Sequence record: PP777464.1
Length of the DNA stretch: 64,000 bases
Direction: 5' to 3' (one strand)
In this document: one piece after another, positions 1,085-19,592 of the stretch
How the letters are laid out: the number at the start of each line of letters is the position of its first letter
How positions within the stretch are numbered: position 1 is the stretch's first letter
Notes under the pieces: generated by a model
What the model was told of the DNA's origin: nothing
What the model saw: the letters and a program-made list of their open reading frames with translations, nothing else
The model's database searches: none
Program-made: the position numbers and the translations under genes

Positions 1085-1166
1085 TTGGGCGTAACTATGC
1101 ACCCGGTGGGCTTGAGTCTTTCTCGACTTGATGGAACTATTATACAGTACTGAAAAAATAAAGCAA
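1085..1166 (-). ncRNA. Candidate small RNA family 1, copy 1
   Basis: Minus-strand TTGCTT-16-TATAAT, hairpin AGTC-gagaaa-GACT, core AGCCCACCGGGTGCA; no ORF. Confidence 0.45.
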
Positions 1167-1200
1167 TACCCTGGAAGCAAAAAAGTTTTAATTAATTTGC

Positions 1201-1288
1201 TTGCTATCCTGGGCCGGACTATGGTACTATATTTCAGTACTGAGAAAGTGCGTTTACCTGCTAGGGTGCGGGAGTGTATCCTTTTTTT
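1201..1288 (+). ncRNA. Candidate small RNA family 1, copy 2 (divergent core)
   Basis: TTGCTA-18-TACTAT, then CCTGCTAGGGTGCGGGAGTGTATCC and a T7 run. Confidence 0.35.
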
Positions 1289-1544
1289 ATATCTTGAATT
1301 TTGGACGGATCTTCCCACCCCCTGGGGTATCCGCTTTCTCGCGTCTATGTAGTAATTATACGCTTTTTCAGGATCAAGTCAATACCTAAAAACAAAATAA
1401 TTGAAAATAATTTAACGCGTTTAAACGGCCTGTAAAGCCCTGGAATGATTGGAATGGTGCAAATGTATAGCTTATGTGTATTAATGCGTTAGAATGCGTC
1501 TGAGGACGTTTTACGGGGTATAGGGATGATTTAGTGGATTGATT

Positions 1545-1631
1545 CAGTACTGAATAATAGTACTCCTATATAGAAAGATAGTTCCCCTGGATGATTGCAG
1601 TACTGAATAATAGTACTCCTATATAGAAAGA
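1545..1631 (+). repeat. 34-bp perfect direct repeat x2
   Basis: CAGTACTGAATAATAGTACTCCTATATAGAAAGA at 1545-1578 and 1598-1631. Confidence 0.9.
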
Positions 1632-1745
1632 AAACTATTTTAAAAGTATTTGTAGAAAGTACTTGCACCGTACTGATAAAAGCGTATAATGTTTTACATC
1701 GAGAGCGGGAACACTTCCCGCTACACATTAAGAGAGATTAAAACG

Positions 1746-2108
1746 ATGGCGACTCAAATCAATAAAATCATGCTTAACCTGGTAAACTTCCGCGATGAGA
1801 TGAAAGGTCTTCCGGCTGAAACTGTAAAAATTCACATTGCAGCTTATCGGGAACTTATTGCAATGTTGCCGCTTAAGCGTGAACAATACGCCGCTACTTT
1901 GATGCTGGATTCAATGATCCATATAATGATCTCAAATGATTTGACGATGGTTTATCAGTATATGGGCGAAAATTTCGCGGTGTGTAGTAAGCCAGTACCA
2001 GGGATGGCAACAACTGAGGAATTGCACGGCTTAAACTTAAAACAAGATGCATGGGATAATATGCCTCGTTTCCTGGTATGGGCTGACAGTGGCAAAATTT
2101 ACAAATAA
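1746..2108 (+). CDS. hypothetical phage protein
   Basis: ORF after promoter cassette; start moved to ATG after GAGAG RBS. Confidence 0.8.
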   Translation: MATQINKIMLNLVNFRDEMKGLPAETVKIHIAAYRELIAMLPLKREQYAATLMLDSMIHIMISNDLTMVYQYMGENFAVCSKPVPGMATTEELHGLNLKQDAWDNMPRFLVWADSGKIYK

Positions 2109-2201
2109 GTTTAATAAAGTACTTGCAAACTATGTTTAATGGCGTATAATGTTTTACATCAGGTGGGGAATAGTTCCCCCCTATATAAGAGGATTAAAAA
2201 A

Positions 2202-2441
2202 ATGGCTAAATCAAAAATGTTCTTAGGTCACAAAAACAAAACTCATTGGAATGTAAGCCTGTGGATTAATAACGATGAGGGATTGTATCGGTTGGCCCTG
2301 GACTTTATTGCCGCCAATACTAATCGCAATGATGCGGCCCGTCATATGATGTTATTTTTAGAACAGACTGGACAAGATAAAACACCGGACGGATTCAAAT
2401 ATAGCACTACTGCGATCCGTGCGGCGATGGTTGGAATGTAA
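2202..2441 (+). CDS. conserved-type phage hypothetical protein (WNVSLWINNDEGLY motif)
   Basis: ORF after cassette and GAGGA RBS. Confidence 0.85.
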   Translation: MAKSKMFLGHKNKTHWNVSLWINNDEGLYRLALDFIAANTNRNDAARHMMLFLEQTGQDKTPDGFKYSTTAIRAAMVGM

Positions 2442-2527
2442 TAGAATTTATTTAAAGTACTATCATTTTTTTGCGATAGTACTTTATAATAGTGTTTTAT
2501 TCATACACCAACGATAAGGGCAACAGC

Positions 2528-2794
2528 ATGAATATTAAGTATTTTGCGACGCGTGAACAAGCTCGGATCGCCGCACGCCAGGACGGGGCAACGTTTAAAG
2601 ATATGGGCGTACAATCGGAACGTGGTAAACGTTGGGCCATTGTAAAGCGTAGTACCGCCAGATCATTACAGTACTGGTTAGCGGCCTTAAAAAGTCCCGA
2701 TAGTGTATCGCGTCGAGTGGTAGAAATAAAGCTCGACCGAAAGGGCAACCGCGTGACCGTGTACCGTACTAAAAAGATTGCAGTACTTGAATAA
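2528..2794 (+). CDS. hypothetical protein, paralog of 14846..15241
   Basis: Shared FATRE.AR..AR..GA.FKDMG and DRKGNRVTVY blocks. Confidence 0.8.
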   Translation: MNIKYFATREQARIAARQDGATFKDMGVQSERGKRWAIVKRSTARSLQYWLAALKSPDSVSRRVVEIKLDRKGNRVTVYRTKKIAVLE

Positions 2795-2875
2795 AAAGTA
2801 CTTGCAAACTATGTTTAAAGGCGTATAATGTTTTACATCGAGAGCGGGAACTCTTCCCGCCTATAACCTGGAGTA

Positions 2876-3112
2876 ATGAAAATGACTAATATGTATATGA
2901 CTGAAGTTAAAACCGTAAAAGATACTACCACGAATAAAACTACTTACTTACAGCGGATCTGTGGTGTATGGCAACGTATCAGCAAATCAAAGTACTTTAA
3001 ATTAACATCATATGCAAACCGTTCGGATTCATTCAGTACTGAAATAAAAGGTAATAAAGTACACCAATACGGCACTTATTATTATTATAGCCTGGACGCG
3101 ATTGCAGTATAA
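2876..3112 (+). CDS. hypothetical phage protein
   Basis: Cassette + GGAG RBS. Confidence 0.75.
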   Translation: MKMTNMYMTEVKTVKDTTTNKTTYLQRICGVWQRISKSKYFKLTSYANRSDSFSTEIKGNKVHQYGTYYYYSLDAIAV

Positions 3113-3142
3113 GCAGTTTACAAATCTTTACAATTGCCGGTA

Positions 3143-3225
3143 TTGACTTATTTTGTCAGTACTGGCATAATGTATTCATTGGCAGATAAGCCGTAGCCCA
3201 TAGGGTGCGGGAGTGTATCTATAGA
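3143..3225 (+). ncRNA. Candidate small RNA family 1, copy 3
   Basis: TTGACT-17-CATAAT, hairpin GGC-agataa-GCC, core TAGCCCATAGGGTGCGGGAGTGTATCT. Confidence 0.45.
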
Positions 3226-3239
3226 AAAAGTAGTTTATT

Positions 3240-3315
3240 ACAGTTACAATTGTGCACCCGGTGGGTTAGCTGTTGTCATGGGGTATATTATGCCAGTACT
3301 TGATAATGCTGTCAA
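3240..3315 (-). ncRNA. Candidate small RNA family 1, copy 4 (convergent with copy 3)
   Basis: Minus-strand TTGACA-17-CATAAT, core CTAACCCACCGGGTGCACAATTGTAACT. Confidence 0.45.
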
Positions 3316-3361
3316 TACTTTTTTTTACTATTCAGTACTGAAAACTATTTTTAAAAAGTAC

Positions 3362-3470
3362 TTGCAAACTATGTTTAAAGGCGTATAATGTTTTACATCA
3401 GGACGGGGAACGAAATAAGTAACTTCCCGTTAAGTAGCCCAGGAGTAAGGCACACGAAAAACTCCCCTGA
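3362..3470 (+). ncRNA. Candidate small RNA family 2, copy 1
   Basis: TTGCAA..TATAAT, two hairpins (ACGGGGA/TCCCGT; CAGGAG/CTCCCCTG), no ATG, next promoter at 3480. Confidence 0.35.
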
Positions 3471-3539
3471 TAAAATAGTTTGACAAATGTTTTTAAAAGC
3501 GTATAATACTTACATCAACTACTGAATGAGGGTTACAAA

Positions 3540-4151
3540 ATGAAAACTATCACTACTACTACTTTCGTTATGGATTTTTCTGAATTGAACGCAGAACAAA
3601 AAACGTCAGCTATCGAACTGGTTCGGGAACGTGAAAAAAACTCAAACGACAATTATTTTTCTGAAAGTGAAATTGAATACTATAAAGAAACAGTACTACC
3701 GGAATATGGCATTAATGACGCTGAAATACAATTCAGTGGCTTTTGGTCCCAGGGTGACGGTGCATCAATCAGTACTGACCACGTTGACGCAGTGAAGTTT
3801 TTACGCAAGGTAAGAGCATTAACTAAGTATCGCTCAATCCGTCACTTGCTGAATGAAGATGATTTGGCGATGAGTGTAAAGCGTTCGCACTCCCACTACT
3901 CGCATGAGAATACTGTAAGCGGGTACATTGAATCGGCTTACACTGATTTAACCGCAAAACAAGAAACGTTAGTTAATGAGCTTGAGGAACTACTCACTGA
4001 AACTATTCGTGAATTATCCCGCAAGTTGTACCGTGATTTAGAGAATGCATATGAGGATCAATTCACTACTGAAAACATTACGGCACTGATTGAGGGTAAC
4101 GAGTATCAATTCAATGTTATTGATGGCGTAGTGGAATCAATCGAATATTAA
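3540..4151 (+). CDS. hypothetical protein with FSGFWSQGDGAS motif
   Basis: 203 aa ORF with own promoter and GAGG RBS; motif recalled from other phage/plasmid proteins, function not established. Confidence 0.85.
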   Translation: MKTITTTTFVMDFSELNAEQKTSAIELVREREKNSNDNYFSESEIEYYKETVLPEYGINDAEIQFSGFWSQGDGASISTDHVDAVKFLRKVRALTKYRSIRHLLNEDDLAMSVKRSHSHYSHENTVSGYIESAYTDLTAKQETLVNELEELLTETIRELSRKLYRDLENAYEDQFTTENITALIEGNEYQFNVIDGVVESIEY

Positions 4152-4243
4152 TTTAAAAAGTACTTGCAAACTAAGTTTAAAAGCGTATAATACTTTATAT
4201 CGAGAGCGGGAATAGTTCCCGCTACTAATGAGGAATACTACAA

Positions 4244-4408
4244 ATGAATACTTTTACCTTCGCTCAATTGAACGCCCTGGATGTATTGTCTGATGCTTTG
4301 CGGGATGCAACTGAAAGCGGTTTATTTGACAATGTTGACATTCACCCTGATGTAATTAATAATTTTTGTGATGCTATCGCAGAAGTACTGGAAGATCTAA
4401 AAAAATAA
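4244..4408 (+). CDS. small acidic hypothetical protein (54 aa)
   Basis: Manually translated ORF after cassette and GAGGA RBS. Confidence 0.7.
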   Translation: MNTFTFAQLNALDVLSDALRDATESGLFDNVDIHPDVINNFCDAIAEVLEDLKK

Positions 4409-4496
4409 TAGAAAGTACTTGCAATTAGTTTTCAGTACTGTATAATGGTTTACATCAAAGGGAGAAATGGTTCTCCCTGGTAATGAGGAAAATACA

Positions 4497-4718
4497 ATGG
4501 CTAATATCACTACTCTTTCCCAACTGGAAGCACTGGTTAAATCTATGCGGGAACATGCTGACAAAATCGGCGTACAAGATCCAGCCGTTTGCTTCTGCGA
4601 CGAATTGAATGATGATACCCTGGTAATAGCAGAAGTCCAGGACGTTTCTAACTATTCCTCGCGTTACACTGGCGGCGTAGCAAATAAAGGTGACTTCTGT
4701 TTATACCTTACAAAATAA
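4497..4718 (+). CDS. hypothetical phage protein
   Basis: Cassette + GAGGA RBS. Confidence 0.8.
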   Translation: MANITTLSQLEALVKSMREHADKIGVQDPAVCFCDELNDDTLVIAEVQDVSNYSSRYTGGVANKGDFCLYLTK

Positions 4719-4721
4719 CAA

Positions 4722-4752
4722 CGCGGGGAGATAATAACTCCCCGTTACTTTT
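4722..4752 (+). terminator. intrinsic terminator
   Basis: CGGGGAG/CTCCCCG stem followed by T-rich tail. Confidence 0.55.
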
Positions 4753-4769
4753 TCAGTACTGAATCATTT

Positions 4770-4853
4770 AATAGACGGATCTCGGCACCCGGTGGGTTAG
4801 TGACAGTTTCGTCTTGATGTAATAATTATGCCAGTACTGGATGCACTTGTCAA
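4770..4853 (-). ncRNA. Candidate small RNA family 1, copy 5
   Basis: Minus-strand TTGACA-17-CATAAT, then ACATCAAGACGAAACTGTCACTAACCCACCGGGTGC; closely matches copy 7. Confidence 0.45.
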
Positions 4854-4962
4854 CAACTATTTTTTCAAATACTTTTTATTAAAATACTTGCAATTAGTTT
4901 TTAAACGCGTATAATGTTTTGCATAGGGGGAGCGGTTCCCCTGGTAACTAAGGAATAAGAAA

Positions 4963-5199
4963 ATGCTTGAACAAATCAAATCAACGTCTGCGAATGTAAC
5001 GGGAACGGTAGTACACTTTACTAGTGATGAATCGCGGGGTGTACCCTATTGTGCTGTACATGTAAACACTGAGGGTAACTACTGGTTTACGGTTTACGGA
5101 TCATATTCATTTGGACGGCCTGGGCATCAAAAAATTCTGGATAAAGTACAACCAACGGGTAAAAATATCACGGCTGAAATGTTTTATAAAAAATCATAA
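4963..5199 (+). CDS. hypothetical phage protein
   Basis: Cassette + AAGGA RBS. Confidence 0.8.
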   Translation: MLEQIKSTSANVTGTVVHFTSDESRGVPYCAVHVNTEGNYWFTVYGSYSFGRPGHQKILDKVQPTGKNITAEMFYKKS

Positions 5200-5283
5200 A
5201 GTACTTGATAATAGTTTTTAGTACTGTATAATATTTTACATCGCAAGGGGGAGCGGTTCCCCCTGGTAACTAAGGATAATCAA

Positions 5284-5583
5284 ATGAAAATTGCAATCAT
5301 CGCCCTGGCTTTATCTGTTTCCTCTTTCGCTGTTAATGCGTCATTAGATGTAAGTAGTGAAAAATTCATTCAGTGCACTGTTGCAATGACCGATGAAAGA
5401 ACTGGCGAGATTGTATTAAAGGATTTAGAGATCCAGCCGGAAGCATTTAAAAACGGCCCGTTCCATGAAGAAGACGAAAACGGTAGCACAACAATTTATT
5501 ATGATGCCAGTACTAAACGCGGTTCGGTCACTGTTATGGATACCGAGAAAGTAACTCATACCGGCGTTATTAATTGCCGTTGA
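5284..5583 (+). CDS. putative exported/periplasmic protein
   Basis: N-terminus MKIAIIALALSVSSFAVNA resembles a Sec signal peptide with AxA cleavage site. Confidence 0.7.
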   Translation: MKIAIIALALSVSSFAVNASLDVSSEKFIQCTVAMTDERTGEIVLKDLEIQPEAFKNGPFHEEDENGSTTIYYDASTKRGSVTVMDTEKVTHTGVINCR

Positions 5584-5604
5584 TAGATACTACGGGGTAA
5601 CATC

Positions 5605-5835
5605 ATGACTAAGCGAATTGTTTTACTTAACGAAAGCAGTACTACACAACTACTTAACGCCGTGCATTATGATATTGAAACGAGCGTTAATCTTATCAGT
5701 ACTGTAGTTCTGTTGGACACTGGAAAGGTAGCCAATGATAAAGCGATTGCAGGTATACTAACGGATCTTGTGCCTGGTAGCAGTGCACCAATAACGTTAA
5801 ATGGTAAAGTGTTTAATATTTTACTCACTGATTAA
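5605..5835 (+). CDS. hypothetical phage protein
   Basis: ORF with GGGG RBS, followed by terminator. Confidence 0.7.
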   Translation: MTKRIVLLNESSTTQLLNAVHYDIETSVNLISTVVLLDTGKVANDKAIAGILTDLVPGSSAPITLNGKVFNILLTD

Positions 5836-5840
5836 GTACA

Positions 5841-5863
5841 TAGCCCACCTGGTGGGCTTTTTT
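5841..5863 (+). terminator. intrinsic terminator
   Basis: AGCCCAC/GTGGGCT stem + T run. Confidence 0.75.
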
Positions 5864-5917
5864 GTTTTTGTAGTATCGTAGTACTGAGATACTTTGAAAA
5901 TAGTTTTAAAAAAGTAG

Positions 5918-6004
5918 TTGACATTACCACAGAAAAGCGTAGAATGTATTACATCAAGACGGGGAGCACTAAGTAGACCGCCAGTAAGTCGAACGAAAAA
6001 CTGG
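5918..6004 (+). ncRNA. Candidate small RNA family 2, copy 3 (divergent)
   Basis: TTGACA-16-TAGAAT, shares ACGGGGA, TAAGTAG and AGTAAG-n-ACGAAAAACT; followed by promoter TGGACA-17-TACACT. Confidence 0.3.
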
Positions 6005-6068
6005 ACACGTCGAGAAAACTTTGATACACTAATAAACGTAAACTAAACTTTAATTGAGGATTTATAAA

Positions 6069-6551
6069 ATGGCTAATGTAAAATCATTCATCAAAGCACT
6101 GGTAGCAAATGAAACTAACGTCGCGGCTGAGATCCTGGCTGAACTGGATAACGATACCATGAAAGCGGTACGCAATAATTTTAACATCGCGTACAGTACT
6201 GCGAAAGAACTACAAGCAAATAAAGCGGCAGAAATTGAAGCGGCAAAGGCGGCCCGTGAAGCAGAACTACAAGCAACAATCGAAAGTATTCAGGCGGCAG
6301 TAGTTGGATTGGATCTGGAAGTAGTTACAGAGATGGCACAAAAAGCCCTGGCGGTTAAGTATGGGGAAGACAAGCCAGAAGTAAAAGCCAAAAAATGGAT
6401 TCAGGAACGCGTAGCGGTAGTACTGGACAACGGGGAAGAATATCTGATTCCGGTGCGTGGTAACTGTATTGCGGTAGTACTGGACGCGATTAACTCCAGT
6501 GGTATGACTCGCGAGGAATGGATCGAAGCTCATCGCAAAGTTGAAGCATAA
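6069..6551 (+). CDS. divergent H-NS/StpA-like protein
   Basis: Ala/Glu-rich coiled coil, then C-terminus LDNGEEYLIPVRGNCIAVVLDAINSSGMTREEWI aligning by eye with H-NS [34 protein letters not shown]. Confidence 0.5.
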   Translation: MANVKSFIKALVANETNVAAEILAELDNDTMKAVRNNFNIAYSTAKELQANKAAEIEAAKAAREAELQATIESIQAAVVGLDLEVVTEMAQKALAVKYGEDKPEVKAKKWIQERVAVVLDNGEEYLIPVRGNCIAVVLDAINSSGMTREEWIEAHRKVEA

Positions 6552-6571
6552 CAATTAAAGTACTGAATCAC

Positions 6572-6600
6572 TAGCCCACCTTAAACAGTGGGCTTTTTTG
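6572..6600 (+). terminator. intrinsic terminator
   Basis: AGCCCAC/GTGGGCT stem + T run. Confidence 0.75.
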
Positions 6601-6826
6601 TGTCTATAGTATTCCAGGCCACCAGCACCGCCTAGAAACGATTCTAACGCATTAAACTGATTATCTGATGCATCGCCCTAGCTGGTGGCGTTAAGGTCGT
6701 TAGAATGCGATTGAGAGCGTTTAAAGTATTTTGCAAAAAGTAATAAAAAGTACTTGCACGATTAAGAGATTAGCGTATAATTAATTACATCAAGGCGAGA
6801 CACCTTAACTAACTGAGGATATAAAG

Positions 6827-9488: not shown

Positions 9489-9497
9489 AAAAAGTGG

Positions 9498-9580
9498 TTG
9501 ACTCCGGTCAGCCATTTTGCTATTATATATTCATTGAGAGATAGCTCACTAGCCCACAGGGTGCATAAGTGTATCTATTA
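9498..9580 (+). ncRNA. Candidate small RNA family 1, copy 6
   Basis: TTGACT-17-TATTAT, hairpin TGAG-agatag-CTCA, core TAGCCCACAGGGTGCATAAGTGTATCT. Confidence 0.45.
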
Positions 9581-9698
9581 TATAAGTATTGAGTACTGAA
9601 AACTATTTTTAAAAAGTACTTGCAAACTATCTCAATAAGCGTATAATGTTTTACATCGAAAGGGGAAACGGTTTCCCCTGGTAATAAGGAAACAAATC

Positions 9699-11153: not shown

Positions 11154-11238
11154 TTGACAATATCCTCCAGTACTGGCATAATACTTACATCAAGACGAGA
11201 ACGTCACTAACCCATAGGGTGCACAAATGTAACTATAT
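11154..11238 (+). ncRNA. Candidate small RNA family 1, copy 7
   Basis: TTGACA-17-CATAAT, hairpin GACG-agaa-CGTC, core TAACCCATAGGGTGCACAAATGTAACT. Confidence 0.45.
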
Positions 11239-11478
11239 AATATCGATCAATAAATGATCAAAAAAGTACTGGATCAATTTAGCATAAGGCGTATAATTCT
11301 GATCAATTCTTGATCAAAGGCAATATACGCAGTTGAATTTATATAGACAGTACAAAGGCGTTACTATTCGTGGTAATGCTGGTGGATATGTAGTATCATA
11401 TGGTTTGAATAAGATAAACACTAGTAGTATTATTGTAGCATTACAGTACTATAGTATTTTTATAATGAGGTTAAAATA

Positions 11479-12423: not shown

Positions 12424-12450
12424 TATTAATTTAATAGAGGATAACAATAA

Positions 12451-13477: not shown

Positions 13478-13495
13478 AAATATTTGAAAAAGGGA

Positions 13496-13572
13496 TTGAC
13501 TCCGGTCAGTCCCTTTGCTATTATATACGCATAGAAACAAATTAGCCCACAGGGTGCATAAATGTATCTATT
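13496..13572 (+). ncRNA. Candidate small RNA family 1, copy 8
   Basis: TTGACT-17-TATTAT, core TAGCCCACAGGGTGCATAAATGTATCT, Chi at 13577. Confidence 0.45.
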
Positions 13573-13615
13573 GTTTGCTGGTGGCTAGTACTGAAAACTA
13601 TTTTTAAAAAAGTAC

Positions 13616-13722: not shown

Positions 13723-13792
13723 TAAAATAGTTTGACAATAGAAAGTAAACGAGTATAATACTTACATCAACCACTGATAAGGAAACATTAAA

Positions 13793-14068
13793 ATGCGGAC
13801 TTTACTTACAGCTAACGAAATCGAGCAAGTACTGACTACTAATCTGGAACAATGGAAACGTGAAGCAGATATCCAGGCGGTTCAATGCCTTAACGATAAG
13901 TTAACGCCAGATGACTTAAGCACGATTGTTGATCCACAATTTTATGAAGATATTCACGACACGTCTTTAAGCGTCGAGGATGTACTTGATAAGCACTACA
14001 TTGATACTGATTTACATGTTTACGGTCGTAAAAACTTTATCACTATTCACGACATTTACAATACTTAA
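13793..14068 (+). CDS. acidic hypothetical protein
   Basis: Promoter + AAGGA RBS. Confidence 0.8.
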   Translation: MRTLLTANEIEQVLTTNLEQWKREADIQAVQCLNDKLTPDDLSTIVDPQFYEDIHDTSLSVEDVLDKHYIDTDLHVYGRKNFITIHDIYNT

Positions 14069-14430
14069 GTATTGACAAAGTATCTTAGTACTGTATAATA
14101 GTTTACATCAAGTGAGGGGAAACGGTTCCCCTCCTAACAAAGAGAGAGAAATAAAAATGGCTAAGTGCACTATCTGTAATAAAGAAATAGTATTAGTTCC
14201 AAGTGCCCGTGAACGTGCCGCTCGGTTCGGTGGCAAAGCGTCAGACTATACAAAAATGTTTACTGCCCATACAGCTTGCCAGGTAGCAAAACGTTCACAA
14301 GAAAGCGTAGAATTAATGCGTAAACTTTCCAAAAAATAAGTATTGACAAAGTATCTTAGTACTGTATAATAGTTTACATCAAGCGAGGGGAATNGTTCCC
14401 CTCCTAACAAAGAGAGAGAAATAAAAATGG
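14066..14430 (+). repeat. ~95-bp near-identical direct repeats flanking one gene
   Basis: AAGTATTGACAAAGTATCTTAGTACTGTATAATAGTTTACATCAAG...CCTCCTAACAAAGAGAGAGAAATAAAAATGGCTA at ~14067 and ~14337. Confidence 0.9.
14157..14339 (+). CDS. small protein with CxxC...HxxC (possible Zn binding)
   Basis: MAKCTICNK...HTACQ; start after GAGAG RBS. Confidence 0.75.
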   Translation: MAKCTICNKEIVLVPSARERAARFGGKASDYTKMFTAHTACQVAKRSQESVELMRKLSKK

Positions 14431-14750
14431 CTATGATCCTTGCCCAGAAAGTAGAATTGAAAATTGTAACCTCCTTTGACATTAACGTTAATCGGTGGAC
14501 TGATTCACACGGCAATACTTACCACTCTTGCTACGTGTCTGCGTTAATTGGCGACCGCTGGGAAGACCTGGGACACGAAACCTTTACATACGGTTACGGT
14601 ACACAAGGCGAATACACGGGCTTGGAGATCATTAAAGAAACCGTTATAGGTTTCAACCCGAAAGAAAAAGTTATTCATCGCATCGAGGAAGAGATCAACA
14701 AAGAAATAACAGTTCGCTACCACGATGTAAAACGTAAGAAAGACATGTAA
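14427..14750 (+). CDS. hypothetical protein, paralog of 7596..7919
   Basis: RWTDSHGNTYHSCYVS. Confidence 0.85.
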   Translation: MAMILAQKVELKIVTSFDINVNRWTDSHGNTYHSCYVSALIGDRWEDLGHETFTYGYGTQGEYTGLEIIKETVIGFNPKEKVIHRIEEEINKEITVRYHDVKRKKDM

Positions 14751-14845
14751 TAGAATCCATTTAAAGTACTATTTGACATTGCCCAGATAGTACTTTATAA
14801 TAGACTCTAACTTGTAGTACTAACTCAACTAATAGGATGTATACC

Positions 14846-15241
14846 ATGATTACTAAATTCTACGCTACCCGTGAAGCTGCCCGTATTGTTGCACGCGAGG
14901 AAGGAGCAGCATTTAAAGACATGGGCAAAGATGCAACGAAAGGACAACGCTGGGCCGTACAGTTCAAAGAAATCTCTGATATTGTGAATTCACCTGAGCC
15001 AGTACTGACAGCAGCAGAACTAAAACGAGCGGATATGCTGGCGGCAATACTTGACGCACAAGATGAGTTTATCGCTGATTCTGATATCAAAGTACAGGTA
15101 AACCACACCGCATGGACTCACGCGGATCACCTGGCAAACCTTAAGCGTCCAAGTGAACTGATTCGCAACCAGAAAGAGATCCGACATGATCGTAAGGGTA
15201 ATCGTGTAACAGTATACAGTAAACGCCGCCAGGTTATCTAA
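14846..15241 (+). CDS. hypothetical protein, paralog of 2528..2794
   Basis: KFYATREAARIVAREEGAAFKDMG...DRKGNRVTVY. Confidence 0.8.
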   Translation: MITKFYATREAARIVAREEGAAFKDMGKDATKGQRWAVQFKEISDIVNSPEPVLTAAELKRADMLAAILDAQDEFIADSDIKVQVNHTAWTHADHLANLKRPSELIRNQKEIRHDRKGNRVTVYSKRRQVI

Positions 15242-15263
15242 TAACTTGCAGTACTAACAACAC

Positions 15264-15288
15264 GGCGGGATCAGTTCCCGCCTTTTTT
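15264..15288 (+). terminator. intrinsic terminator
   Basis: GGCGGGA/TCCCGCC + T6. Confidence 0.8.
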
Positions 15289-15302
15289 ATAGGACAAACA
15301 AA

Positions 15303-15557
15303 ATGATTAAGGTTCAACTATATAAAGATAACATCTTACGGGTACACTATAAAGCACCTCAGAGAATCATCACAAAGGCCGTACAGCTTGCTAATGAGTT
15401 TATTAATGGTAACCTATTACCTAGGAAGTTAAGCAACGGGAAACTGCGTGTAATCGACGTGGACACTAACAACAGGATAGTAATCGAGAACACAGGAAAG
15501 ATAAACCTTTATGAGCATCAACAATACAATAAGAAAATAAAACTAATATCACGTTGA
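15303..15557 (+). CDS. basic hypothetical protein
   Basis: AGGA RBS. Confidence 0.7.
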   Translation: MIKVQLYKDNILRVHYKAPQRIITKAVQLANEFINGNLLPRKLSNGKLRVIDVDTNNRIVIENTGKINLYEHQQYNKKIKLISR

Positions 15558-15610
15558 CAGTACTCAATTGTTTTAGTACTATGTACACATACCAACACGG
15601 GAGAAACAAA

Positions 15611-15829
15611 ATGAAATTATCTAAAATCGAAAAGAAAACTATTGATGAAGCAGTTAAGCACGGTTATACCTTTCGTAATGATTCACATTTTACCAATTTT
15701 CAACAAGGGTATCGTACTATTAAAAAACTAATTGACAAAGGTTTATTAGTTGAAGTCAATAACGGTAACGGTATCGAGTATCAACCAACACAGGACGCAT
15801 TTTATTTTAAGAAATATAATATTATCTAA
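15611..15829 (+). CDS. small protein, possibly winged-helix-like
   Basis: GGGAG RBS; TIKKLIDKGLLVEV pattern only. Confidence 0.7.
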   Translation: MKLSKIEKKTIDEAVKHGYTFRNDSHFTNFQQGYRTIKKLIDKGLLVEVNNGNGIEYQPTQDAFYFKKYNII

Positions 15830-15886
15830 TTGACAGTACTCAAATGTTTTAGTACTATATGTACATACCAACACGGGGGAAACAAA

Positions 15887-16129
15887 ATGATTACTTTAGA
15901 AAAACGTATCAAAGAAACTACATCGCTGGTGGAACTGTTAACAGTACTCAAATGTAAAACAACACCATTCAGCACGCCGGACTTTATTAATATGGTTGAT
16001 GTTAATGGTCGCTATCGTATCACGGTCGAACAAGGAGCGGCGAAAGTATTCAGTACTAAAAACACGAAGGAAGTGATCCACGCCGTTAATGTTAAAAAAG
16101 TAGTTGCCATTGATAGTAAAGTACTGTAA
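15887..16129 (+). CDS. hypothetical phage protein
   Basis: Duplicated promoter/leader also at 15555; GGGGA RBS. Confidence 0.75.
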   Translation: MITLEKRIKETTSLVELLTVLKCKTTPFSTPDFINMVDVNGRYRITVEQGAAKVFSTKNTKEVIHAVNVKKVVAIDSKVL

Positions 16130-16160
16130 TATAGTTTCATTAACTCAAGGAGAACATGCA

Positions 16161-16745
16161 ATGCGTAATTATACTAAATTCATCCGTACACTGTCAGAAA
16201 TGGAAACCAACAAAGAGATCCTTTCAGCTTGTCGGTTAGCTGGCCTGGAGATCATCGGTGCTGGTTCTTCCCGTATAGTTTTCGCTTTAAATGATCGGTT
16301 AGTGATTAAGGTCGCGAATTGTGATGCGGGTGTAGAACAAAATGAAACTGAATGTAAGGTATGGAATTTTTTAGACTATGACCGCCCTCAATTGAAACAG
16401 TACTTTGCAAAGGTGCATATGCATTTATGCGATCCTGATAATATGTTTATCGTTATGGATCGGTTGAGTACTGCAAGCAAAGGCAGTGTGAAGCACGTAA
16501 ACGCGTGCAATGAATTAAAGTACAATATTAAACGTAATGCAATCGAACGCCAGCACCGCTTTGCTGATGCACTACAACACGTTGATGATACATTATCAAC
16601 ACTAACGATAAGAGATATCAGAAAACAGAATATCGGCCAGGATCGTAATGGACTTATTAAAGTACTTGATTACGGTTTAACCAGCAATATCTGGAATCAG
16701 TACTATAAAAAGCGTGATGTGGCAGCAAGTAAGGTAACACGATAA
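16161..16745 (+). CDS. protein kinase-like (PKL fold) protein
   Basis: Gly loop GAGSSR, VIKVA Lys, alphaC Glu (QNETE), catalytic RDIRKQN, DYG; AGGAG RBS before 16161. Confidence 0.75.
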   Translation: MRNYTKFIRTLSEMETNKEILSACRLAGLEIIGAGSSRIVFALNDRLVIKVANCDAGVEQNETECKVWNFLDYDRPQLKQYFAKVHMHLCDPDNMFIVMDRLSTASKGSVKHVNACNELKYNIKRNAIERQHRFADALQHVDDTLSTLTIRDIRKQNIGQDRNGLIKVLDYGLTSNIWNQYYKKRDVAASKVTR

Positions 16746-16764
16746 AAAAAGATTAAAAAAGGGA

Positions 16765-16846
16765 TTGACTCCGGTCAGTCCCTTTGCTATTATATATCCA
16801 TTGAGAGATAACTCACTGACCCATAGGGTGCGGAAGTGTATCTATT
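16765..16846 (+). ncRNA. Candidate small RNA family 1, copy 9
   Basis: TTGACT-17-TATTAT, hairpin TGAG-agataa-CTCA, core GACCCATAGGGTGCGGAAGTGTATCT. Confidence 0.45.
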
Positions 16847-16966
16847 ATATAAGTATTCAGTACTGAAAACTATTTTTAAAAAAGTACTTGCATTGTACTT
16901 AGAATCAAGTATAATGTTTTATATCGAGAGGGGGAATGGTTCTCCCTGGCAATAAGGAATAAAATC

Positions 16967-17188
16967 ATGACTACAATGACTTGCATTTACGCTTCTAATC
17001 TTCTGAATGATGCGGCCTTTAATGTTGATTCAGAATATCAATGTTATCGGGATGAAAATAAAAAAGTTTTTGTAGTTGATAATAATGGTTTCCATATTGA
17101 ATTACAATCCGGCTTCACTGGTGTTGATGGTAAATCAGTATGGGGCGTACAGGATGATAAAGGCACATATCATTTTAAACGTAATTAA
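16967..17188 (+). CDS. hypothetical phage protein
   Basis: Cassette + AAGGA RBS. Confidence 0.8.
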   Translation: MTTMTCIYASNLLNDAAFNVDSEYQCYRDENKKVFVVDNNGFHIELQSGFTGVDGKSVWGVQDDKGTYHFKRN

Positions 17189-17271
17189 GTATTGACAAAG
17201 TATATCAGTACTGTATAATAGTTTACATCAAGGGGAGAATAGTTCTCCCCGATACTAAAAGGAATAAAATC

Positions 17272-17676
17272 ATGACTACTACTAATCAAGCTCGGTCCAT
17301 CGCCAACGATAAAAATCATGCTGCAATGGTCGCTGGTTACATTGAAGCTATGCAATTCAGTACTGTACACAATGAGAACGGCGATTACCTGGAAGATTAT
17401 GAGTTATCTGATGAAGCACGTCAAGCGGCGGTGATTGCATGTTCTCGCTTCATTGAGAAACACGGTAATGATCTGGAAGTAGTTCGCGGTATGTTTATTG
17501 ATTACGGTTATGAGCAAGCTGGTCATGATCTGTTCCTTACCCGCGAAGGTCACGGAACTGGTTTTTGGGATCGTGGTTTAGGTCACTATGGCGATGTATT
17601 CACGAAGTACTGCGAAGAAATCAACGTTTGCGATCCCTATGTAGGCGATGATAATCTAATCTATATGGGCGAATAA
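17272..17676 (+). CDS. phage hypothetical protein with GHDLFLTREGHGTGFWDR motif
   Basis: Cassette + AAGGA RBS; motif type recalled from other phage early genes. Confidence 0.85.
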   Translation: MTTTNQARSIANDKNHAAMVAGYIEAMQFSTVHNENGDYLEDYELSDEARQAAVIACSRFIEKHGNDLEVVRGMFIDYGYEQAGHDLFLTREGHGTGFWDRGLGHYGDVFTKYCEEINVCDPYVGDDNLIYMGE

Positions 17677-17765
17677 AAGTATTTGACAAAGTATATCAGT
17701 ACTGTATAATAGTTTACATCAAGGGGAGAACTATTCTCCCCACACCAATAAAAGGAAACAAAATT

Positions 17766-18038
17766 ATGTCCAGCTACTCCGCTACTATGATCATTAAAGA
17801 TATGAACGGTAATCCTACTTCTGCTGGTGGATCATTTGGAAATATTAACTTAGATGGGCGGTTATCCATGCAATCAGCCATCGATACAGCGAAAGAAGTT
17901 TTTAAGAATGAATGTACTGTTAGTAAGCTGGATTATATGGGATTCGCTATCGAGAAAACTACTCGTTTTGTGAACTACAAAAATCCACTGATGATTGATA
18001 CTAACCTGAAAGCTAACGAAGTGGGGTACTTATTATGA
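17766..18038 (+). CDS. hypothetical phage protein
   Basis: Cassette + AAGGA RBS. Confidence 0.8.
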   Translation: MSSYSATMIIKDMNGNPTSAGGSFGNINLDGRLSMQSAIDTAKEVFKNECTVSKLDYMGFAIEKTTRFVNYKNPLMIDTNLKANEVGYLL

Positions 18039-18226
18039 CAGTAGAAGAAGTTAAAAAAGTACTGGCAGTACTACGATATCATAATCATTGCAAGGTGAAG
18101 AATGATCCTGATTATCTTGATTCATCCCTGGAGGAAGACACCTTGAACGCTATAAGCCATATGCAGACATTAGCAAAGCGTATGACTGAAAAGAACATGC
18201 CGGACTATATCGGAAATAAAATTTAA
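18035..18226 (+). CDS. hypothetical phage protein
   Basis: ATGA overlap. Confidence 0.75.
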   Translation: MTVEEVKKVLAVLRYHNHCKVKNDPDYLDSSLEEDTLNAISHMQTLAKRMTEKNMPDYIGNKI

Positions 18227-18313
18227 AAAGTACTTGCATTGTAGTTAGATTAACGTATAATGTTTTATATCGAGAGGGGGAAATGGTTTCCCCTCAAGTC
18301 CAGGAGATACACC

Positions 18314-18577
18314 ATGAACACTATCGAAATCACTATCAATGCACACGTATACGACAACGTAGTACTGCAAACTACTATGACCGCCAATGATACCAGTACT
18401 TTGCGGAATACTGTTATTAGTGCCGTATGTGCCGCTATCGGTGATGTCGCCCTGGAAAATGCAAAACACGTAAACGATGGTTTCACTATGTGCAAACGTG
18501 ATAACGCAAAACATATCATCGTGGAAGGTTACGGCGGTGTAGAATTTAATGTTTATATGAAAAAAGTACTTGCATAA
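18314..18577 (+). CDS. hypothetical phage protein
   Basis: Cassette + AGGAG RBS; start moved to 18314. Confidence 0.8.
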   Translation: MNTIEITINAHVYDNVVLQTTMTANDTSTLRNTVISAVCAAIGDVALENAKHVNDGFTMCKRDNAKHIIVEGYGGVEFNVYMKKVLA

Positions 18578-18644
18578 TAACTAAAACAAAGTATAATGTT
18601 TTGCATAGGGGGAGATATCCTCCCCCACTAAAAGGAGTAATAAA

Positions 18645-18869
18645 ATGGCTAACTTTGATGAACTGATGCGGGAAGTAGCTAACCTGGCAGAAGAGAAGAA
18701 ATCATTCGATTCTATCTATAACACCGCTCACCGTGATTCAGTACTGGCATGTAACCAGGATCAAAAAGATGAACTAATCGCCACCTATCATGAAGCATGG
18801 AAGTACTACCGACAATGGGAGAAAGAAGAAAGTGAGTCTACCATTGACGGCCTCAATAATCTAATCTAA
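18645..18869 (+). CDS. acidic hypothetical protein
   Basis: Cassette + AGGAG RBS. Confidence 0.8.
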   Translation: MANFDELMREVANLAEEKKSFDSIYNTAHRDSVLACNQDQKDELIATYHEAWKYYRQWEKEESESTIDGLNNLI

Positions 18870-18945
18870 AAGTTTTATTTCAGTACTATTGACATAGCTT
18901 GATAGTACTGATGTAATAACTTTACTAACTACAAGGGGAAACATA

Positions 18946-19203
18946 ATGGATCAGTTCACACAATATCGGGTAAATCCACAAGCTATGGCCTACGTAGAAG
19001 ACCATAAAACGTTACCAGTACTGCAACCAGTTAAAGGCCATATCTATCGTGCAATGTCGTGGTGTACGGCCCAGGATGGCTATAAAACCGTAGCCGTGGG
19101 TATGTATTGCGGTGATGGTGAATGGTTTGATCCAAATAATCCGGTAGCCATTGACAGTACTGAAAAAATGAAATGGGCCGACTACATCGAAGATATTTCA
19201 TAA
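18946..19203 (+). CDS. hypothetical phage protein
   Basis: Promoter + GGGGA RBS. Confidence 0.8.
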   Translation: MDQFTQYRVNPQAMAYVEDHKTLPVLQPVKGHIYRAMSWCTAQDGYKTVAVGMYCGDGEWFDPNNPVAIDSTEKMKWADYIEDIS

Positions 19204-19293
19204 AAACTATTTGACAGTACTAACCAATAATGTATAATGTTTTACATAGAGCGGGGGAATAGTTCTCCCGCCAATAGTTTGGAGTAAAACATT

Positions 19294-19494
19294 ATGTCTA
19301 TCGCTATCGCCCTGGTTGAAGTACTGAAAGAAGCTAAAGCCAACCAGATCGACGTAAAGATCCAGGAACTACAAAACGGCTTAATCGGCTGTACTTGTAC
19401 CGCTGGTGGAGCGGCAGACTATCGAGAACACGAATCACTCGAATCACTGGTTCGGTATCTTACCATGATCGTTGATGATTGGAGAATCATCTAA
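19294..19494 (+). CDS. hypothetical phage protein
   Basis: Cassette + GGAG RBS. Confidence 0.75.
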   Translation: MSIAIALVEVLKEAKANQIDVKIQELQNGLIGCTCTAGGAADYREHESLESLVRYLTMIVDDWRII

Positions 19495-19516
19495 CAAAAA
19501 AGAATAAAAAAAGGGA

Positions 19517-19592
19517 TTGACTCCGGTCAGTCCCTTTGCTATTATATACGCATAGACAAAAACTAGCCCACAGGGTGCATAGGTGTATCCAA
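19517..19592 (+). ncRNA. Candidate small RNA family 1, copy 10
   Basis: TTGACT-17-TATTAT, core TAGCCCACAGGGTGCATAGGTGTATCC, Chi at 19625. Confidence 0.45.

What the first reader, a model, noticed from the sequence alone, without database searches (positions are those of the whole stretch)
1085..19592. Ten dispersed promoter-driven, ORF-less units with a conserved core: candidate phage small-RNA family
Seen: ten units at 1085-1166(-), 1201-1288, 3143-3225, 3240-3315(-), 4770-4853(-), 9498-9580, 11154-11238, 13496-13572, 16765-16846 and 19517-19592. Each has a near-consensus sigma70 promoter, usually a variable 5' hairpin, and the core (T)A(A/G)CCCA(C/T)(A/C)GGGTGC(A/G)-N4-TGTA(A/T)C(T/C). There is no RBS or ATG. 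The three minus-strand copies are the only clear minus-strand promoters in this otherwise plus-strand region, and each core is oriented with its promoter. In most copies the core can fold into (A/G)CCC/GGGT plus TGC(A/G)-N4-TGTA. The A/G variation there keeps a pair through G-U and the 4-nt loop varies freely, which fits RNA structure. Inference: a multi-copy early RNA, for example a decoy/sponge for a host RNA-binding or defence protein. I do not recognise it as a known family.
Basis: partly seen in the sequence, partly recalled or inferred. Interest (0 to 1): 0.88.

Follow-up and report, generated by a model that had tools for sequence, protein, structure and literature searches.

The report
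Repeated early RNA module in phage terminal repeat
A jumbo E. coli phage and all its relatives carry about eleven copies, only in the genome's terminal repeat, of a strong host-type promoter followed by one conserved folded RNA segment that matches no described RNA family and probably acts as an abundant very-early regulatory or decoy RNA.

Summary
The window is the left end of Escherichia phage fEgEco12 (Asteriusvirus). All units lie inside its published 20,993-bp direct terminal repeat (DTR). The 12-nt core occurs 9 times in the window against 0.07 expected. A covariance model finds 10 copies per DTR and none in the roughly 333 kb of unique DNA.

The same unit is found only in RaK2-like jumbo phages (67 records, 8 host genera), about 9-12 per genome, always in the DTR region. 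It is absent from E. coli K-12, Rfam and the searched literature.

Each unit is a sigma70 promoter followed by a 55-60-nt 5' module. The module has a hairpin with 27 different stems and a purine-rich loop, a YUAR linker, and an invariant CCC-N3-4-GGGUGC. That segment can pair backwards (CCC/GGG) or forwards with a Y/R-restricted tail that needs G-U pairs. There is no ORF.

Plus-strand copies read on into further promoters and genes. Several lone minus-strand copies meet a terminator 40-50 nt on, and others face a convergent partner.

Best reading: a new structured early RNA module that binds a protein. Function is untested. A cis antitermination or pause leader, or a DNA operator, is not excluded.

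The parts
1075..1166 (-). Unit 1: promoter (TTGCTT-N17-TATAAT, about 1166-1139) plus 5' RNA module 1138-1075. It transcribes towards the left genome end and is followed by a second minus promoter at 1041-1013.
   Evidence: Exact core at 1110-1099. Model R1 41.5 bits. Sequence. Promoter 1041(-).
1201..1293 (+). Unit 2 (degenerate): weak promoter, module 1229-1293 with core variant CCU-GCUA-GGGUGC. Its GGGUGC/GUAUCC helix plus a U7 run forms an intrinsic-terminator-like end at 1263-1282.
   Evidence: R1 21.4 bits, E 0.095. Terminator-like site. Sequence.
1291..1382 (-). Convergent partner of unit 2.
   Evidence: R1 34.8 bits, E 2.8e-5. Promoter. Sequence.
3143..3232 (+). Unit 4: promoter 3143-3171 and module 3170-3232. 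Convergent with unit 5; the two cores start 68 nt apart.
3230..3315 (-). Unit 5: promoter TTGACA-N17-CATAAT at 3315-3287 and module 3293-3230. Convergent with unit 4.
4724..4853 (-). Unit 6: promoter 4853-4825 and module 4824-4761, then a terminator-like hairpin at 4744-4724. This predicts a free-standing RNA of about 100 nt, antisense to no gene start.
   Evidence: terminator-like hairpin on both strands at 4723-4745.
9491..9588 (+). Unit 7: terminator-like hairpin overlapping the -35 box (9491-9518), promoter 9498-9526 and module 9525-9588. A second promoter at 9620-9647 and gene g024 (9699) follow.
11154..11246 (+). Unit 8: promoter TTGACA-N17-CATAAT at 11154-11182 and module 11183-11246.
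13489..13581 (+). Unit 9: terminator/promoter composite 13489-13524 and module 13518-13581. A Chi site lies at 13577, and two further promoters precede g037.
16758..16855 (+). Unit 10: terminator/promoter composite 16758-16793 and module 16792-16855 (the best-scoring copy in the window).
   Evidence: (65.6 bits).
19510..19602 (+). Unit 11: terminator/promoter composite 19510-19545 and module 19539-19602. It is the last copy before the end of the terminal repeat (20,993).

Best explanation
The units are a family of very-early transcription units confined to the 21-kb direct terminal repeat of phage fEgEco12 (11 per repeat, so 22 per packaged genome). The same holds in every RaK2-like jumbo phage examined.

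How it is built: host sigma70 RNA polymerase is predicted to start 6-8 nt after each -10 box. The first 55-60 nt of every transcript form one conserved RNA module with these parts.
1. A 5' hairpin whose stem sequence is free but whose loop is purine-rich (GCGAAA, AGAACAA, AGAUAA, GAGAAA).
2. A 4-5-nt YUAR linker.
3. An invariant CCC-N3-4-GGGUGC. This segment can pair backwards (CCC/GGG hairpin) or forwards with the tail (GGGUGC/GYRYYY, half of it G-U pairs), so the element may be bistable.

What is selected: the module itself, not anything coded downstream.
- Several lone minus-strand copies and copy 1201 meet a terminator and would give short free RNAs.
- Convergent copies may also give short RNAs by polymerase collision; this is my inference.
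- Plus-strand copies carry the module as the 5' leader of early mRNAs, from which it could be released at the A/U-rich stretch that follows.

Proposed mechanism: it acts as RNA, by binding a conserved protein partner (host or phage) through the invariant core in the first minutes of infection. It would be a high-copy decoy or regulatory tag. It would not act by coding or by base-pairing to a host RNA.

Shown: repeat family, chance level, DTR restriction, clade restriction, promoters, absence of ORFs, hairpin statistics.
Inferred: transcription start sites, that the RNA accumulates, that it binds a protein, and what that protein is.
For: - Far above chance: 9 exact cores against 0.07 expected.
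- DTR restriction: in fEgEco12, CBB, RaK2, BF and 7t3 every covariance-model hit lies in the terminal-repeat region and none in about 330 kb of unique DNA per genome. DTR limits come from PMC13070987 and the CBB record.
- Clade restriction: 67 phage records, all RaK2-like. Among viral contigs, almost all matches are on contigs of about 345-378 kb, the size of these phages. Hits in cellular genomes are single and scattered among unrelated taxa, as chance would give. Nothing in E. coli K-12.
- Promoters: near-consensus sigma70 promoters precede the copies.
- 5' hairpin: 50/76 copies have a stem of 4 bp or more, 3-6 nt from CCC, against 25.7 +/- 3.7 in shuffles, with 27 distinct stems. There are 102 double-sided changes against 51 +/- 6, and 0 of 500 shuffles reach that.
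- CCC/GGG hairpin: loop length 3 or 4 nt, an R-U closing pair that is A-U or G-U, and one CCU/AGG compensatory copy.
- Tail helix: 90.7% of cells pair against 34-66% when slid, with 74 one-sided G-U<->G-C or U-A<->U-G changes. This helix cannot form on the opposite strand. The sense strand folds about 1 kcal/mol better than the antisense strand (p = 0.002).
- Gene-independent layout: no minus-strand genes lie downstream of the minus copies. Seven of 27 minus copies have a terminator-like site within 100 nt, mostly 40-50 nt beyond the core. Almost every DTR gene has its own promoter, 12 of them perfect consensus, so the core-bearing promoters are not needed just to express genes.
- Analogy: the distant relative PA5oct has two ncRNAs in its DTR, each 1-5% of phage reads in RNA-seq (PMC7318152).
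Against: - No transcript evidence for this phage group. Only assembled contigs from RNA libraries were available, and they break at the repeats.
- The invariant core shows almost no compensatory covariation. Strict sequence conservation fits a DNA or protein-recognition site as well.
- The two helices that use GGG are mutually exclusive. Folding favours CCC/GGG only modestly: mean pair probability 0.59 against 0.20, and RNAalifold picks hairpin 2.
- 45 of 49 plus-strand copies have no terminator within 100 nt. They look like leaders, which fits a cis-acting role as well as a trans one.
- No partner protein is identified and no host RNA resembles the motif.
- The 76-86 copies are related by descent, so the counts overstate independent events.
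- The PA5oct ncRNAs are not homologous.
Confidence: 0.5

Rival explanations
1. Cis-acting transcription leader. The nascent module, or the non-template DNA strand at a pause site inside it, modifies the RNA polymerase that made it. This would be processive antitermination like the HK022 put RNA, or a hairpin-stabilised promoter-proximal pause where a factor is loaded, like ops/RfaH or lambdoid Q. Polymerases started at these promoters would then behave differently from those started at the roughly 40 other DTR promoters.
For: - The module is always at the extreme 5' end, directly after a strong early promoter and in the promoter's orientation.
- Its size and two-hairpin layout resemble put (own knowledge).
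- Plus-strand copies run into multi-gene clusters full of hairpins and terminator/promoter composites.
- GGG-N8-U-G inside the core fits the G-10/Y-1/G+1 elemental pause pattern, with a hairpin just upstream. This is my reading of the position table combined with published pause consensus from memory.
- The alternative pairing resembles an attenuator.
Against: - Minus-strand and convergent copies have no genes to serve. Several run straight into a terminator opposite a coding operon, where antitermination would only make antisense RNA.
- Nearly every DTR gene has its own consensus promoter.
- The RfaH ops and Nus boxA consensus sequences are not enriched and none lies on a unit.
- The forward helix is weak (about -4.6 kcal/mol) and lacks a U-tract in most copies, so there is no evident terminator to control.
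- The pause pattern has low information content.
Confidence: 0.2
2. DNA operator. The invariant CCC-N3-4-GGGTGC is the double-stranded binding site of a phage (or host) protein that sits just downstream of a special class of early promoters in the terminal repeat. The protein would shut these promoters off or block elongation at the early-to-middle switch. The 5' hairpin would be only an ordinary mRNA-stabilising stem.
For: - Strict primary-sequence conservation of 12 nt or more across eight host genera, with almost no compensatory change.
- The core is a partial palindrome.
- It sits next to promoters.
- A specific protein (TF1) binding near early promoters in a terminal redundancy is known for SPO1 (own knowledge).
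Against: - The spacing between the CCC and GGG half-sites changes between 3 and 4 bp (16 of 76 copies), which dimeric operators rarely tolerate.
- The site is asymmetric: UAR on the left, UGC on the right.
- The distance from the -10 box to the core varies by roughly 10 bp between the window's copies, while the distance from the 5' RNA hairpin to the core is fixed at 3-6 nt.
- Tail positions 8-12 vary only by changes that keep RNA pairing with GGGUG, mostly as G-U pairs that have no meaning in duplex DNA.
- The sense strand folds better than the antisense strand.
Confidence: 0.17
3. Passenger of promoter/terminator cassette shuffling. The units are PeSL-like composite regulatory cassettes that spread by recombination in the hyperplastic terminal repeat. 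The conserved leader would persist mainly because it is part of the recombining unit, without a function of its own as RNA.
For: - Four plus copies have a terminator-like hairpin overlapping the -35 box, as PeSLs do (PMC4122927).
- Contigs from related phages join unit ends to other promoters (9575->14334, 13570->14333).
- The DTR differs between relatives by cassette indels.
Against: - Promoter, spacer and 5' stem sequences have diverged freely while the core stays invariant across genera. That indicates purifying selection on the core itself.
- Cassette indels relative to phage 121Q end at the other, core-less promoters (12423/12773, 14163/14331, 17283/17677), not at the cores.
- Gene conversion alone would homogenise whole units, not 12 nt of them.
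Confidence: 0.08
4. Nested activator-dependent (middle-type) promoter. GGGTGC would act like a MotA box and the TAT-rich hexamer 11 nt downstream as a -10 element.
For: The hexamer 11 nt after GGGTGC often reads TATTAT, TATAAT, TATAGT or TAAAAT.
Against: - The last position of the hexamer is T in only 40 of 76 copies (position 17).
- The motif occurs nowhere upstream of genes outside the DTR.
- It also sits on minus-strand copies that have no gene.
- The middle-type promoter proposed for this clade has a different box, TGAAACG (PMC5259590).
Confidence: 0.03

Closest known systems
PeSLs (promoter-early stem-loops) of T4-type phages (PMC2839356, PMC4122927)
   Same: Both are dispersed, repeated composites of a terminator stem-loop and a sigma70 early promoter, in hyperplastic regions full of small ORFs, and associated with cassette indels. 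Units 7, 9, 10 and 11 have exactly such a terminator/-35 overlap.
   Different: A PeSL is defined by terminator plus promoter only. Here the defining, invariant part is a 35-nt transcribed segment downstream of the start site. It is also present on copies without the terminator overlap and on minus-strand copies. Indels end at core-less promoters.
HK022 put RNA (cis-acting antiterminator RNA) - comparison from my own knowledge
   Same: Both are protein-independent-looking, roughly 60-70-nt two-hairpin RNAs placed directly downstream of phage early promoters, orientation-dependent, and present in more than one copy.
   Different: There is no detectable sequence relation. There are 11 copies rather than 2. 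Many copies point at no gene or at a terminator. Antitermination is untested.
Lambda nut (boxA/boxB) and RfaH ops leader elements
   Same: All are short conserved elements in the early transcribed region that would be read co-transcriptionally.
   Different: boxA and ops consensus sequences are absent from the units. Hairpin 2 has a 3-4-bp stem with a 3-4-nt loop, unlike the 5-bp stem and GNRA-like pentaloop of boxB.
DTR ncRNA001/ncRNA002 of Pseudomonas jumbo phage PA5oct (PMC7318152)
   Same: Both are ORF-less regions in the long terminal repeat of a related jumbo phage that uses host RNA polymerase. The PA5oct ones are shown by RNA-seq to be highly transcribed.
   Different: The PA5oct RNAs are single, 236- and 451-nt regions without this motif. 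The covariance model finds nothing in PA5oct (best E 1.4).
Host-takeover module in the terminal redundancy of Bacillus phage SPO1 (own knowledge)
   Same: Both are terminal repeats packed with strong early host-type promoters and tiny genes, the first genome region to be expressed.
   Different: No conserved transcribed RNA motif is described for SPO1, and the promoters there serve operons.
RNA anti-CRISPRs (solitary repeat units) and pseudo-ToxI antitoxin mimics (own knowledge)
   Same: Both are phage-encoded, promoter-driven small structured RNAs that act as decoys for a host defence protein.
   Different: Those are recognisable copies of a host RNA (a CRISPR repeat or ToxI repeat). This motif has no counterpart in E. 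coli K-12, whose CRISPR repeats (known to be present, not checked here) would have been among the targets. The copies are dispersed, not tandem.

Membership tests
Any Rfam 15 family | Covariance-model score at or above the family's gathering threshold | tested here: not met
   No hits in the 64-kb window at gathering score. At E<=5 on 1-21000 there are only two weak hits, Trp leader and S15 leader, and neither lies on a unit.
Sigma70-dependent early promoter | TTGACA-like -35 box, 16-18-bp spacer, TATAAT-like -10 box with A2 and T6 | tested here: met
   Listed with 10-11 of 12 matches: 3143, 9498, 11154, 13496, 16765, 19517 (+) and 4853, 3315, 1382 (-). The promoters at 1166(-) and 1201(+) are not among the listed sites and read as weaker by eye. 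Activity was not tested.
PeSL (promoter-early stem-loop) | Terminator-like stem-loop fused to an early sigma70 promoter | tested here: met
   Terminator-like hairpins overlap the -35 box at 9491-9518, 13489-13516, 16758-16785 and 19510-19537. This is met for 4 of 11 units only. The other units have a promoter without that hairpin.
PeSL (promoter-early stem-loop) | The elements mark the ends of cassette insertions, deletions or replacements between close relatives | tested here: inconclusive
   Contig joints occur at unit ends (9575->14334, 13570->14333). But indels relative to 121Q end at core-less promoters.
HK022 put-type antiterminator RNA | Two stem-loops just downstream of an early promoter | tested here: met
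   Hairpin 1 and hairpin 2 are separated by 3-6 nt and start within about 10 nt of the predicted start site. This is a resemblance only.
HK022 put-type antiterminator RNA | Makes the transcribing polymerase terminator-resistant in cis | not testable with these tools
   This needs reporter or in vitro transcription assays. The layout of the minus-strand copies argues against it.
Lambda-type nut site | boxA consensus next to a boxB hairpin | tested here: not met
   boxA-like matches are at chance level (33 against 36.8 expected) and none lies on a unit.
RfaH ops element | GGCGGTAGnnTG in the leader, on the non-template strand | tested here: not met
   16 matches with up to 2 mismatches against 14.1 expected, and none lies on a unit.
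Decoy copy of a host RNA (RNA anti-CRISPR, pseudo-antitoxin) | Recognisable similarity to a host RNA or repeat | tested here: not met
   E. coli K-12 chromosome: best model hit has E 5.5. The 12-mer with up to 1 mismatch gives 52 hits against 29 for the backwards-read control, which I judge close to chance. No BLAST hit in 5,426 E. coli genomes at E<=10. Other hosts and plasmids were not tested.
Small protein gene | Conserved open frame with a start codon | tested here: not met
   At most 15 of 76 copies have an in-transcript ATG/GTG/TTG in any one frame across the core, with inconsistent lengths.
Intrinsic terminator / attenuator | Stable G+C-rich hairpin followed by a U-tract | tested here: not met
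   The GGGUGC/GYRYYY helix is about -4.6 kcal/mol. A U-run follows it in only a few copies: window 1263-1282, GAP32 17348 and, by eye, CBB 15231.

The most novel reading that the evidence does not exclude
The module is a new class of RNA-based host-takeover or counter-defence element. About 22 gene copies sit in the first DNA to be expressed and flood the cell within minutes with a compact, possibly bistable (riboswitch-like) RNA. That RNA would capture a conserved enterobacterial protein or small-molecule signal, for example a transcription, RNA-decay or immune-sensing factor. If so, it is conserved across all RaK2-like jumbo phages.
Probability: 0.2. Interest if true: 0.85.

Novelty: new variant of a known kind. 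Interest (0 to 1): 0.62.

Why it matters
RaK2-like jumbo phages (Asteriusvirus, Alcyoneusvirus, Mimasvirus, Eneladusvirus and others) are being developed for therapy, yet their early programme is essentially unknown.

This motif is the most strongly conserved non-coding feature of the terminal repeat in the eight phages compared, the region where the phage's consensus host-type promoters cluster. It is invariant from E. coli phages to Yersinia, Erwinia and Klebsiella phages, while the surrounding genes and promoters diverge.

If it is a functional RNA, it is a new phage RNA family (a candidate Rfam entry) with about 20 gene copies per genome. It would also be a handle on how these phages take over the host or evade defence.

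If it is a cis leader or an operator, it defines a separately regulated class of immediate-early promoters.

Either way it gives a precise, mutable 12-nt target, and a covariance model that marks the terminal-repeat region in the five genomes tested, which could help locate it in unfinished assemblies of this clade.

Tried and rejected
1. Small peptide. The Y/M variation in CAY-MGG looks synonymous (His-Arg), but there is no consistent start codon or frame.
2. Known RNA family. Rfam gives nothing at gathering score or at E<=5.
3. Copy of a host sequence. There is no BLAST hit in E. coli genomes, no model hit in K-12, and the 12-mer occurs there at about chance level. The 67 hits in 596 Gb of cellular genomes are single and scattered among unrelated taxa, as chance would give.
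4. ops or boxA. Not present on the units.
5. Nested middle promoter. The downstream hexamer is TAT-rich but lacks a conserved final T, and the motif never precedes genes outside the DTR.
6. Long-range pairing of the tail with the 5' leader. A unit's own leader and tail pair no better than leaders and tails from different units (-2.92 against -2.71 kcal/mol, permutation p = 0.09). A few suggestive cases remain.
7. Strand asymmetry of the 5' hairpin. None (p = 0.8), so that hairpin alone cannot tell RNA from DNA.
8. Expression evidence. Runs labelled RNA hold the region, but only as assembled contigs, which break at the repeats and show no starts, ends or strands.
9. Homology with the RNA-seq-proven DTR ncRNAs of PA5oct. 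None.
10. Minus-strand units serving minus-strand genes left of the right-hand repeat. There are none.
11. Literature search for the motif and for transcriptomes of this clade. Nothing relevant.
12. The first MAFFT and model alignments misregister the 5' hairpin (58% of cells paired). I therefore measured it with a geometry-anchored search of my own.

Full report
**Identity of the window.** Bases 1-20000 are 100% identical to bases 1-20000 of Escherichia phage fEgEco12 (PP777464.1, 374,733 bp, Asteriusvirus). The paper describing this phage reports 20,993-bp direct terminal repeats (DTR), found with PhageTerm and confirmed by restriction mapping (PMC13070987). Every unit in the finding (1085-19592) therefore lies in the left DTR. 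The record annotates 56 small plus-strand genes there, nearly all hypothetical, and nothing on the units.

**Check of the observation.** The ten sequences are as described.
- The core CCCAYMGGGTGC has 9 exact hits in the window against 0.07 expected.
- In the whole genome the exact core occurs 18 times, 9 in each DTR, and never in the unique 333 kb.
- I built a covariance model (R1) from 68 copies in eight phages.
- R1 finds 10 copies per DTR in fEgEco12. Its promoter TTGACT-N16-TATAAT lies at 1382-1355(-).
The family has 11 members per DTR.
- The promoter scan lists near-consensus sigma70 promoters for nine of the eleven units. It also shows that the DTR holds about 50 more such promoters, 12 of them perfect TTGACA-N16/17-TATAAT.
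- The core-bearing promoters are thus a distinct minority class. Almost every gene has a promoter of its own.

**Distribution.**
- A 56-nt query finds the unit in 67 phage records, all RaK2-like jumbo phages of Escherichia, Salmonella, Klebsiella, Cronobacter, Pectobacterium, Yersinia, Serratia and Erwinia.
- Where termini are annotated, the match lies inside the terminal repeat.
- In CBB, RaK2, BF and 7t3, all R1 hits (9-12 per repeat) cluster in one region of about 20 kb, and none lies elsewhere.
- IMG/VR matches are almost all on contigs of about 345-378 kb, the size of these phages.
- The 67 hits in 596 Gb of cellular genomes are single and scattered through unrelated taxa, as expected by chance.
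- E. coli K-12 has no model hit, and the 12-mer occurs there at about chance level.
- Rfam 15 gives nothing, even at E<=5.
- A full-text search for the motif found only unrelated papers.

**Anatomy, from 76 distinct copies in eight phages.** After the -10 box and a predicted start 6-8 nt later come four parts.
1. A 5' hairpin. 50 of 76 copies have a stem of 4 bp or more ending 3-6 nt before CCC, against 25.7 +/- 3.7 in shuffles. There are 27 different stem sequences but a small set of purine-rich loops: GCGAAA, AGAACAA, AGAUAA and GAGAAA. On the model alignment there are 102 double-sided changes against 51 +/- 6 in shuffles. Some copies keep only the A-rich loop sequence without a stem.
2. A linker, N-U-A-R.
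3. CCC, a loop of 3 nt (60 copies) or 4 nt (16 copies), then GGGUGC. The preceding R can pair with the U as A-U or G-U. One copy has a compensatory CCU/AGG.
4. A tail. Positions 8-12 after GGGUGC are almost only Y, R, Y, Y, Y. These are exactly the letters that can pair with G-G-G-U-G. The helix GGGUGC/GYRYYY is paired in 90.7% of cells against 34-66% when slid, with 74 one-sided G-U<->G-C or U-A<->U-G changes. Half of its pairs are normally G-U, so it exists only on the sense strand. The sense strand also folds about 1 kcal/mol better than the antisense strand (p = 0.002).

This helix and the CCC/GGG hairpin share the GGG and exclude each other. Thermodynamic folding gives mean pair probabilities of 0.59 and 0.20, and RNAalifold picks CCC/GGG. 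No consistent ORF crosses the core.

**Downstream context.** This varies, which is informative.
- The six strong plus-strand copies in the window run, after 15-30 nt that usually contain AGTACT, into a second promoter with an A/T-rich upstream element. A 5' hairpin, a ribosome-binding site and a gene follow.
- Across phages only 4 of 49 plus-strand copies have a terminator-like site within 100 nt. In one case the gene follows directly (7t3).
- The minus-strand copies face no genes.
- Several lone minus-strand copies (window 4796-, RaK2 21890- and 14822-, 7t3 13247- and others) meet a terminator 40-50 nt after the core. This predicts RNAs of about 100 nt.
- Others form convergent pairs whose cores start 68 nt apart in fEgEco12, GAP32, CBB, BF and Yen9-04. 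Each transcript would then contain the core and, a little further on, its complement.
- In the 1201 copy the forward helix is followed by U7 and scores as a terminator.

The only constant is the 5' module itself.

**Interpretation.**
- Selection is on the roughly 35-nt core and on the existence, not the sequence, of the neighbouring hairpin.
- The fixed hairpin-to-core spacing, the variable promoter-to-core distance, the 3/4-nt loop variation and the G-U-dependent tail helix all point to a structure on the transcribed sense strand, that is, RNA.
- The minus-strand, convergent and self-terminated copies indicate that the RNA module is a product in its own right. The plus-strand copies carry it as a leader.
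- I therefore favour a structured, protein-binding early RNA made in very high copy from the terminal repeat.
- Precedent by analogy: the distant relative PA5oct has two ORF-less DTR regions, each giving 1-5% of phage reads in RNA-seq (PMC7318152). They are not homologous.

**Rivals.**
- *Cis-acting leader (put-like antitermination, or a hairpin-stabilised pause where a factor loads).* This fits the strict 5' position and the alternative pairing. It is hard to reconcile with copies that point at terminators or at nothing, and with every gene having its own promoter. The ops and boxA consensus sequences are absent.
- *Double-stranded DNA operator.* This fits the strict sequence conservation. 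It is disfavoured by the variable half-site spacing, the asymmetry and the G-U pattern.
- *PeSL-like recombination passenger.* This explains the terminator/promoter overlap of four units (PMC4122927) and some contig joints. It does not explain why 12 nt stay invariant while the rest diverges, and indels relative to 121Q end at core-less promoters.
- *Nested promoter or peptide.* Both were rejected.

**Limits.**
- No raw RNA reads exist for this group in the runs offered. The contigs laid on 9000-14999 break at the repeats and say nothing about starts, ends or strand.
- Start sites are predicted from promoters only.
- The copies are paralogues and orthologues, so counts of changes are not independent events.
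- The model alignment leans towards the structure it was built with.
- Comparisons with put, SPO1, pause consensus and RNA anti-CRISPRs rest on my own knowledge, not on tests here.
- The masked N at 14394 and at 37086-37135 were left untouched.

**Verdict.** This is a real, strongly non-random, clade-wide and terminal-repeat-restricted family of promoter-driven units with a conserved structured 5' RNA module. It is undescribed in Rfam and in the searched literature. Its function is open. Confidence is about 0.5 that it acts as an RNA through protein binding, with cis-leader and DNA-operator readings as live alternatives.

Noticed in passing
window 590, 6681, 10868, 11378, 12328, 13577, 15925, 17823, 19402, 19625 (+); 578 and 6619 (reverse complement): There are ten Chi sites (GCTGGTGG) on the plus strand, all inside the terminal repeat and none in 21-64 kb. 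Base composition predicts about 0.07 per strand in 21 kb (my arithmetic). Two more lie in the opposite orientation near the left end, and Chi also sits in or next to units in 7t3 and RaK2. This suggests that the linear genome ends are protected from RecBCD.
   Followed up: partly
whole window; e.g. 1146, 3158, 3295, 4833, 11168: The palindrome AGTACT occurs 256 times in 64 kb (about 21 expected from composition), 138 of them in the DTR. CAGTACTG occurs 63 times. In 27 of 76 units it lies in the promoter spacer at -21 to -18, and in 38 of 76 it lies 20-34 nt after the core. It may be a binding site or a promoter component.
   Followed up: partly
window 3480-19238 (+): Twelve perfect consensus sigma70 promoters (TTGACA-N16/17-TATAAT) lie in the DTR, against one in the next 43 kb. 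About 50 more are near-consensus. Nearly every tiny DTR gene has its own promoter.
   Followed up: partly
window 1-1688, especially 780-920: The left terminal 1.7 kb has no annotated gene. It holds short iteron-like repeats (ACGGCTA x5, TGGATGGC x3) just inside the genome end. Two minus-strand promoters (1166, 1041) transcribe towards them. They could be packaging, end-protection or origin signals.
   Followed up: no
L003 12040-12070 (RaK2), L010 3330-3350 (K64-1), L015 2390-2410 and 8660-8680 (7t3), L013 1030-1050 (BF): Between convergent unit pairs of relatives lies a palindrome (GAGAATGATAATCATTCTC type) that closely resembles the E. coli Fur box as I recall it. It is not present in the fEgEco12 window.
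   Followed up: no
L004 about 10200 (CBB), L013 about 9070 (BF), L012 about 6380 (Yen9-04), L015 about 13200 and 4630 (7t3): Lone minus-strand units in relatives are followed by CTGT-N8-ACAG palindromes that resemble LexA (SOS) boxes. There are none in the fEgEco12 window.
   Followed up: no
window 3278-3388 (g05), 16836-16955 (g045), 1019-1318(-) (= g614 in the right repeat): Three annotated or listed ORFs overlap units, their promoters or their tails, and are probably not genes.
   Followed up: no
window 12423/12781, 14163/14331, 17283/17677: Gene-cassette insertions and deletions relative to phage 121Q, and in metagenomic contigs, end at repeated core-less promoters. This matches PeSL-type modular shuffling.
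   Followed up: partly
window 11479-11736, 11800-12156, 16161-16745: The DTR encodes a DksA/TraR-like zinc-finger protein, a GNAT acetyltransferase and a Ser/Thr kinase-like protein (annotation). These are plausible host-takeover factors expressed together with the units.
   Followed up: no
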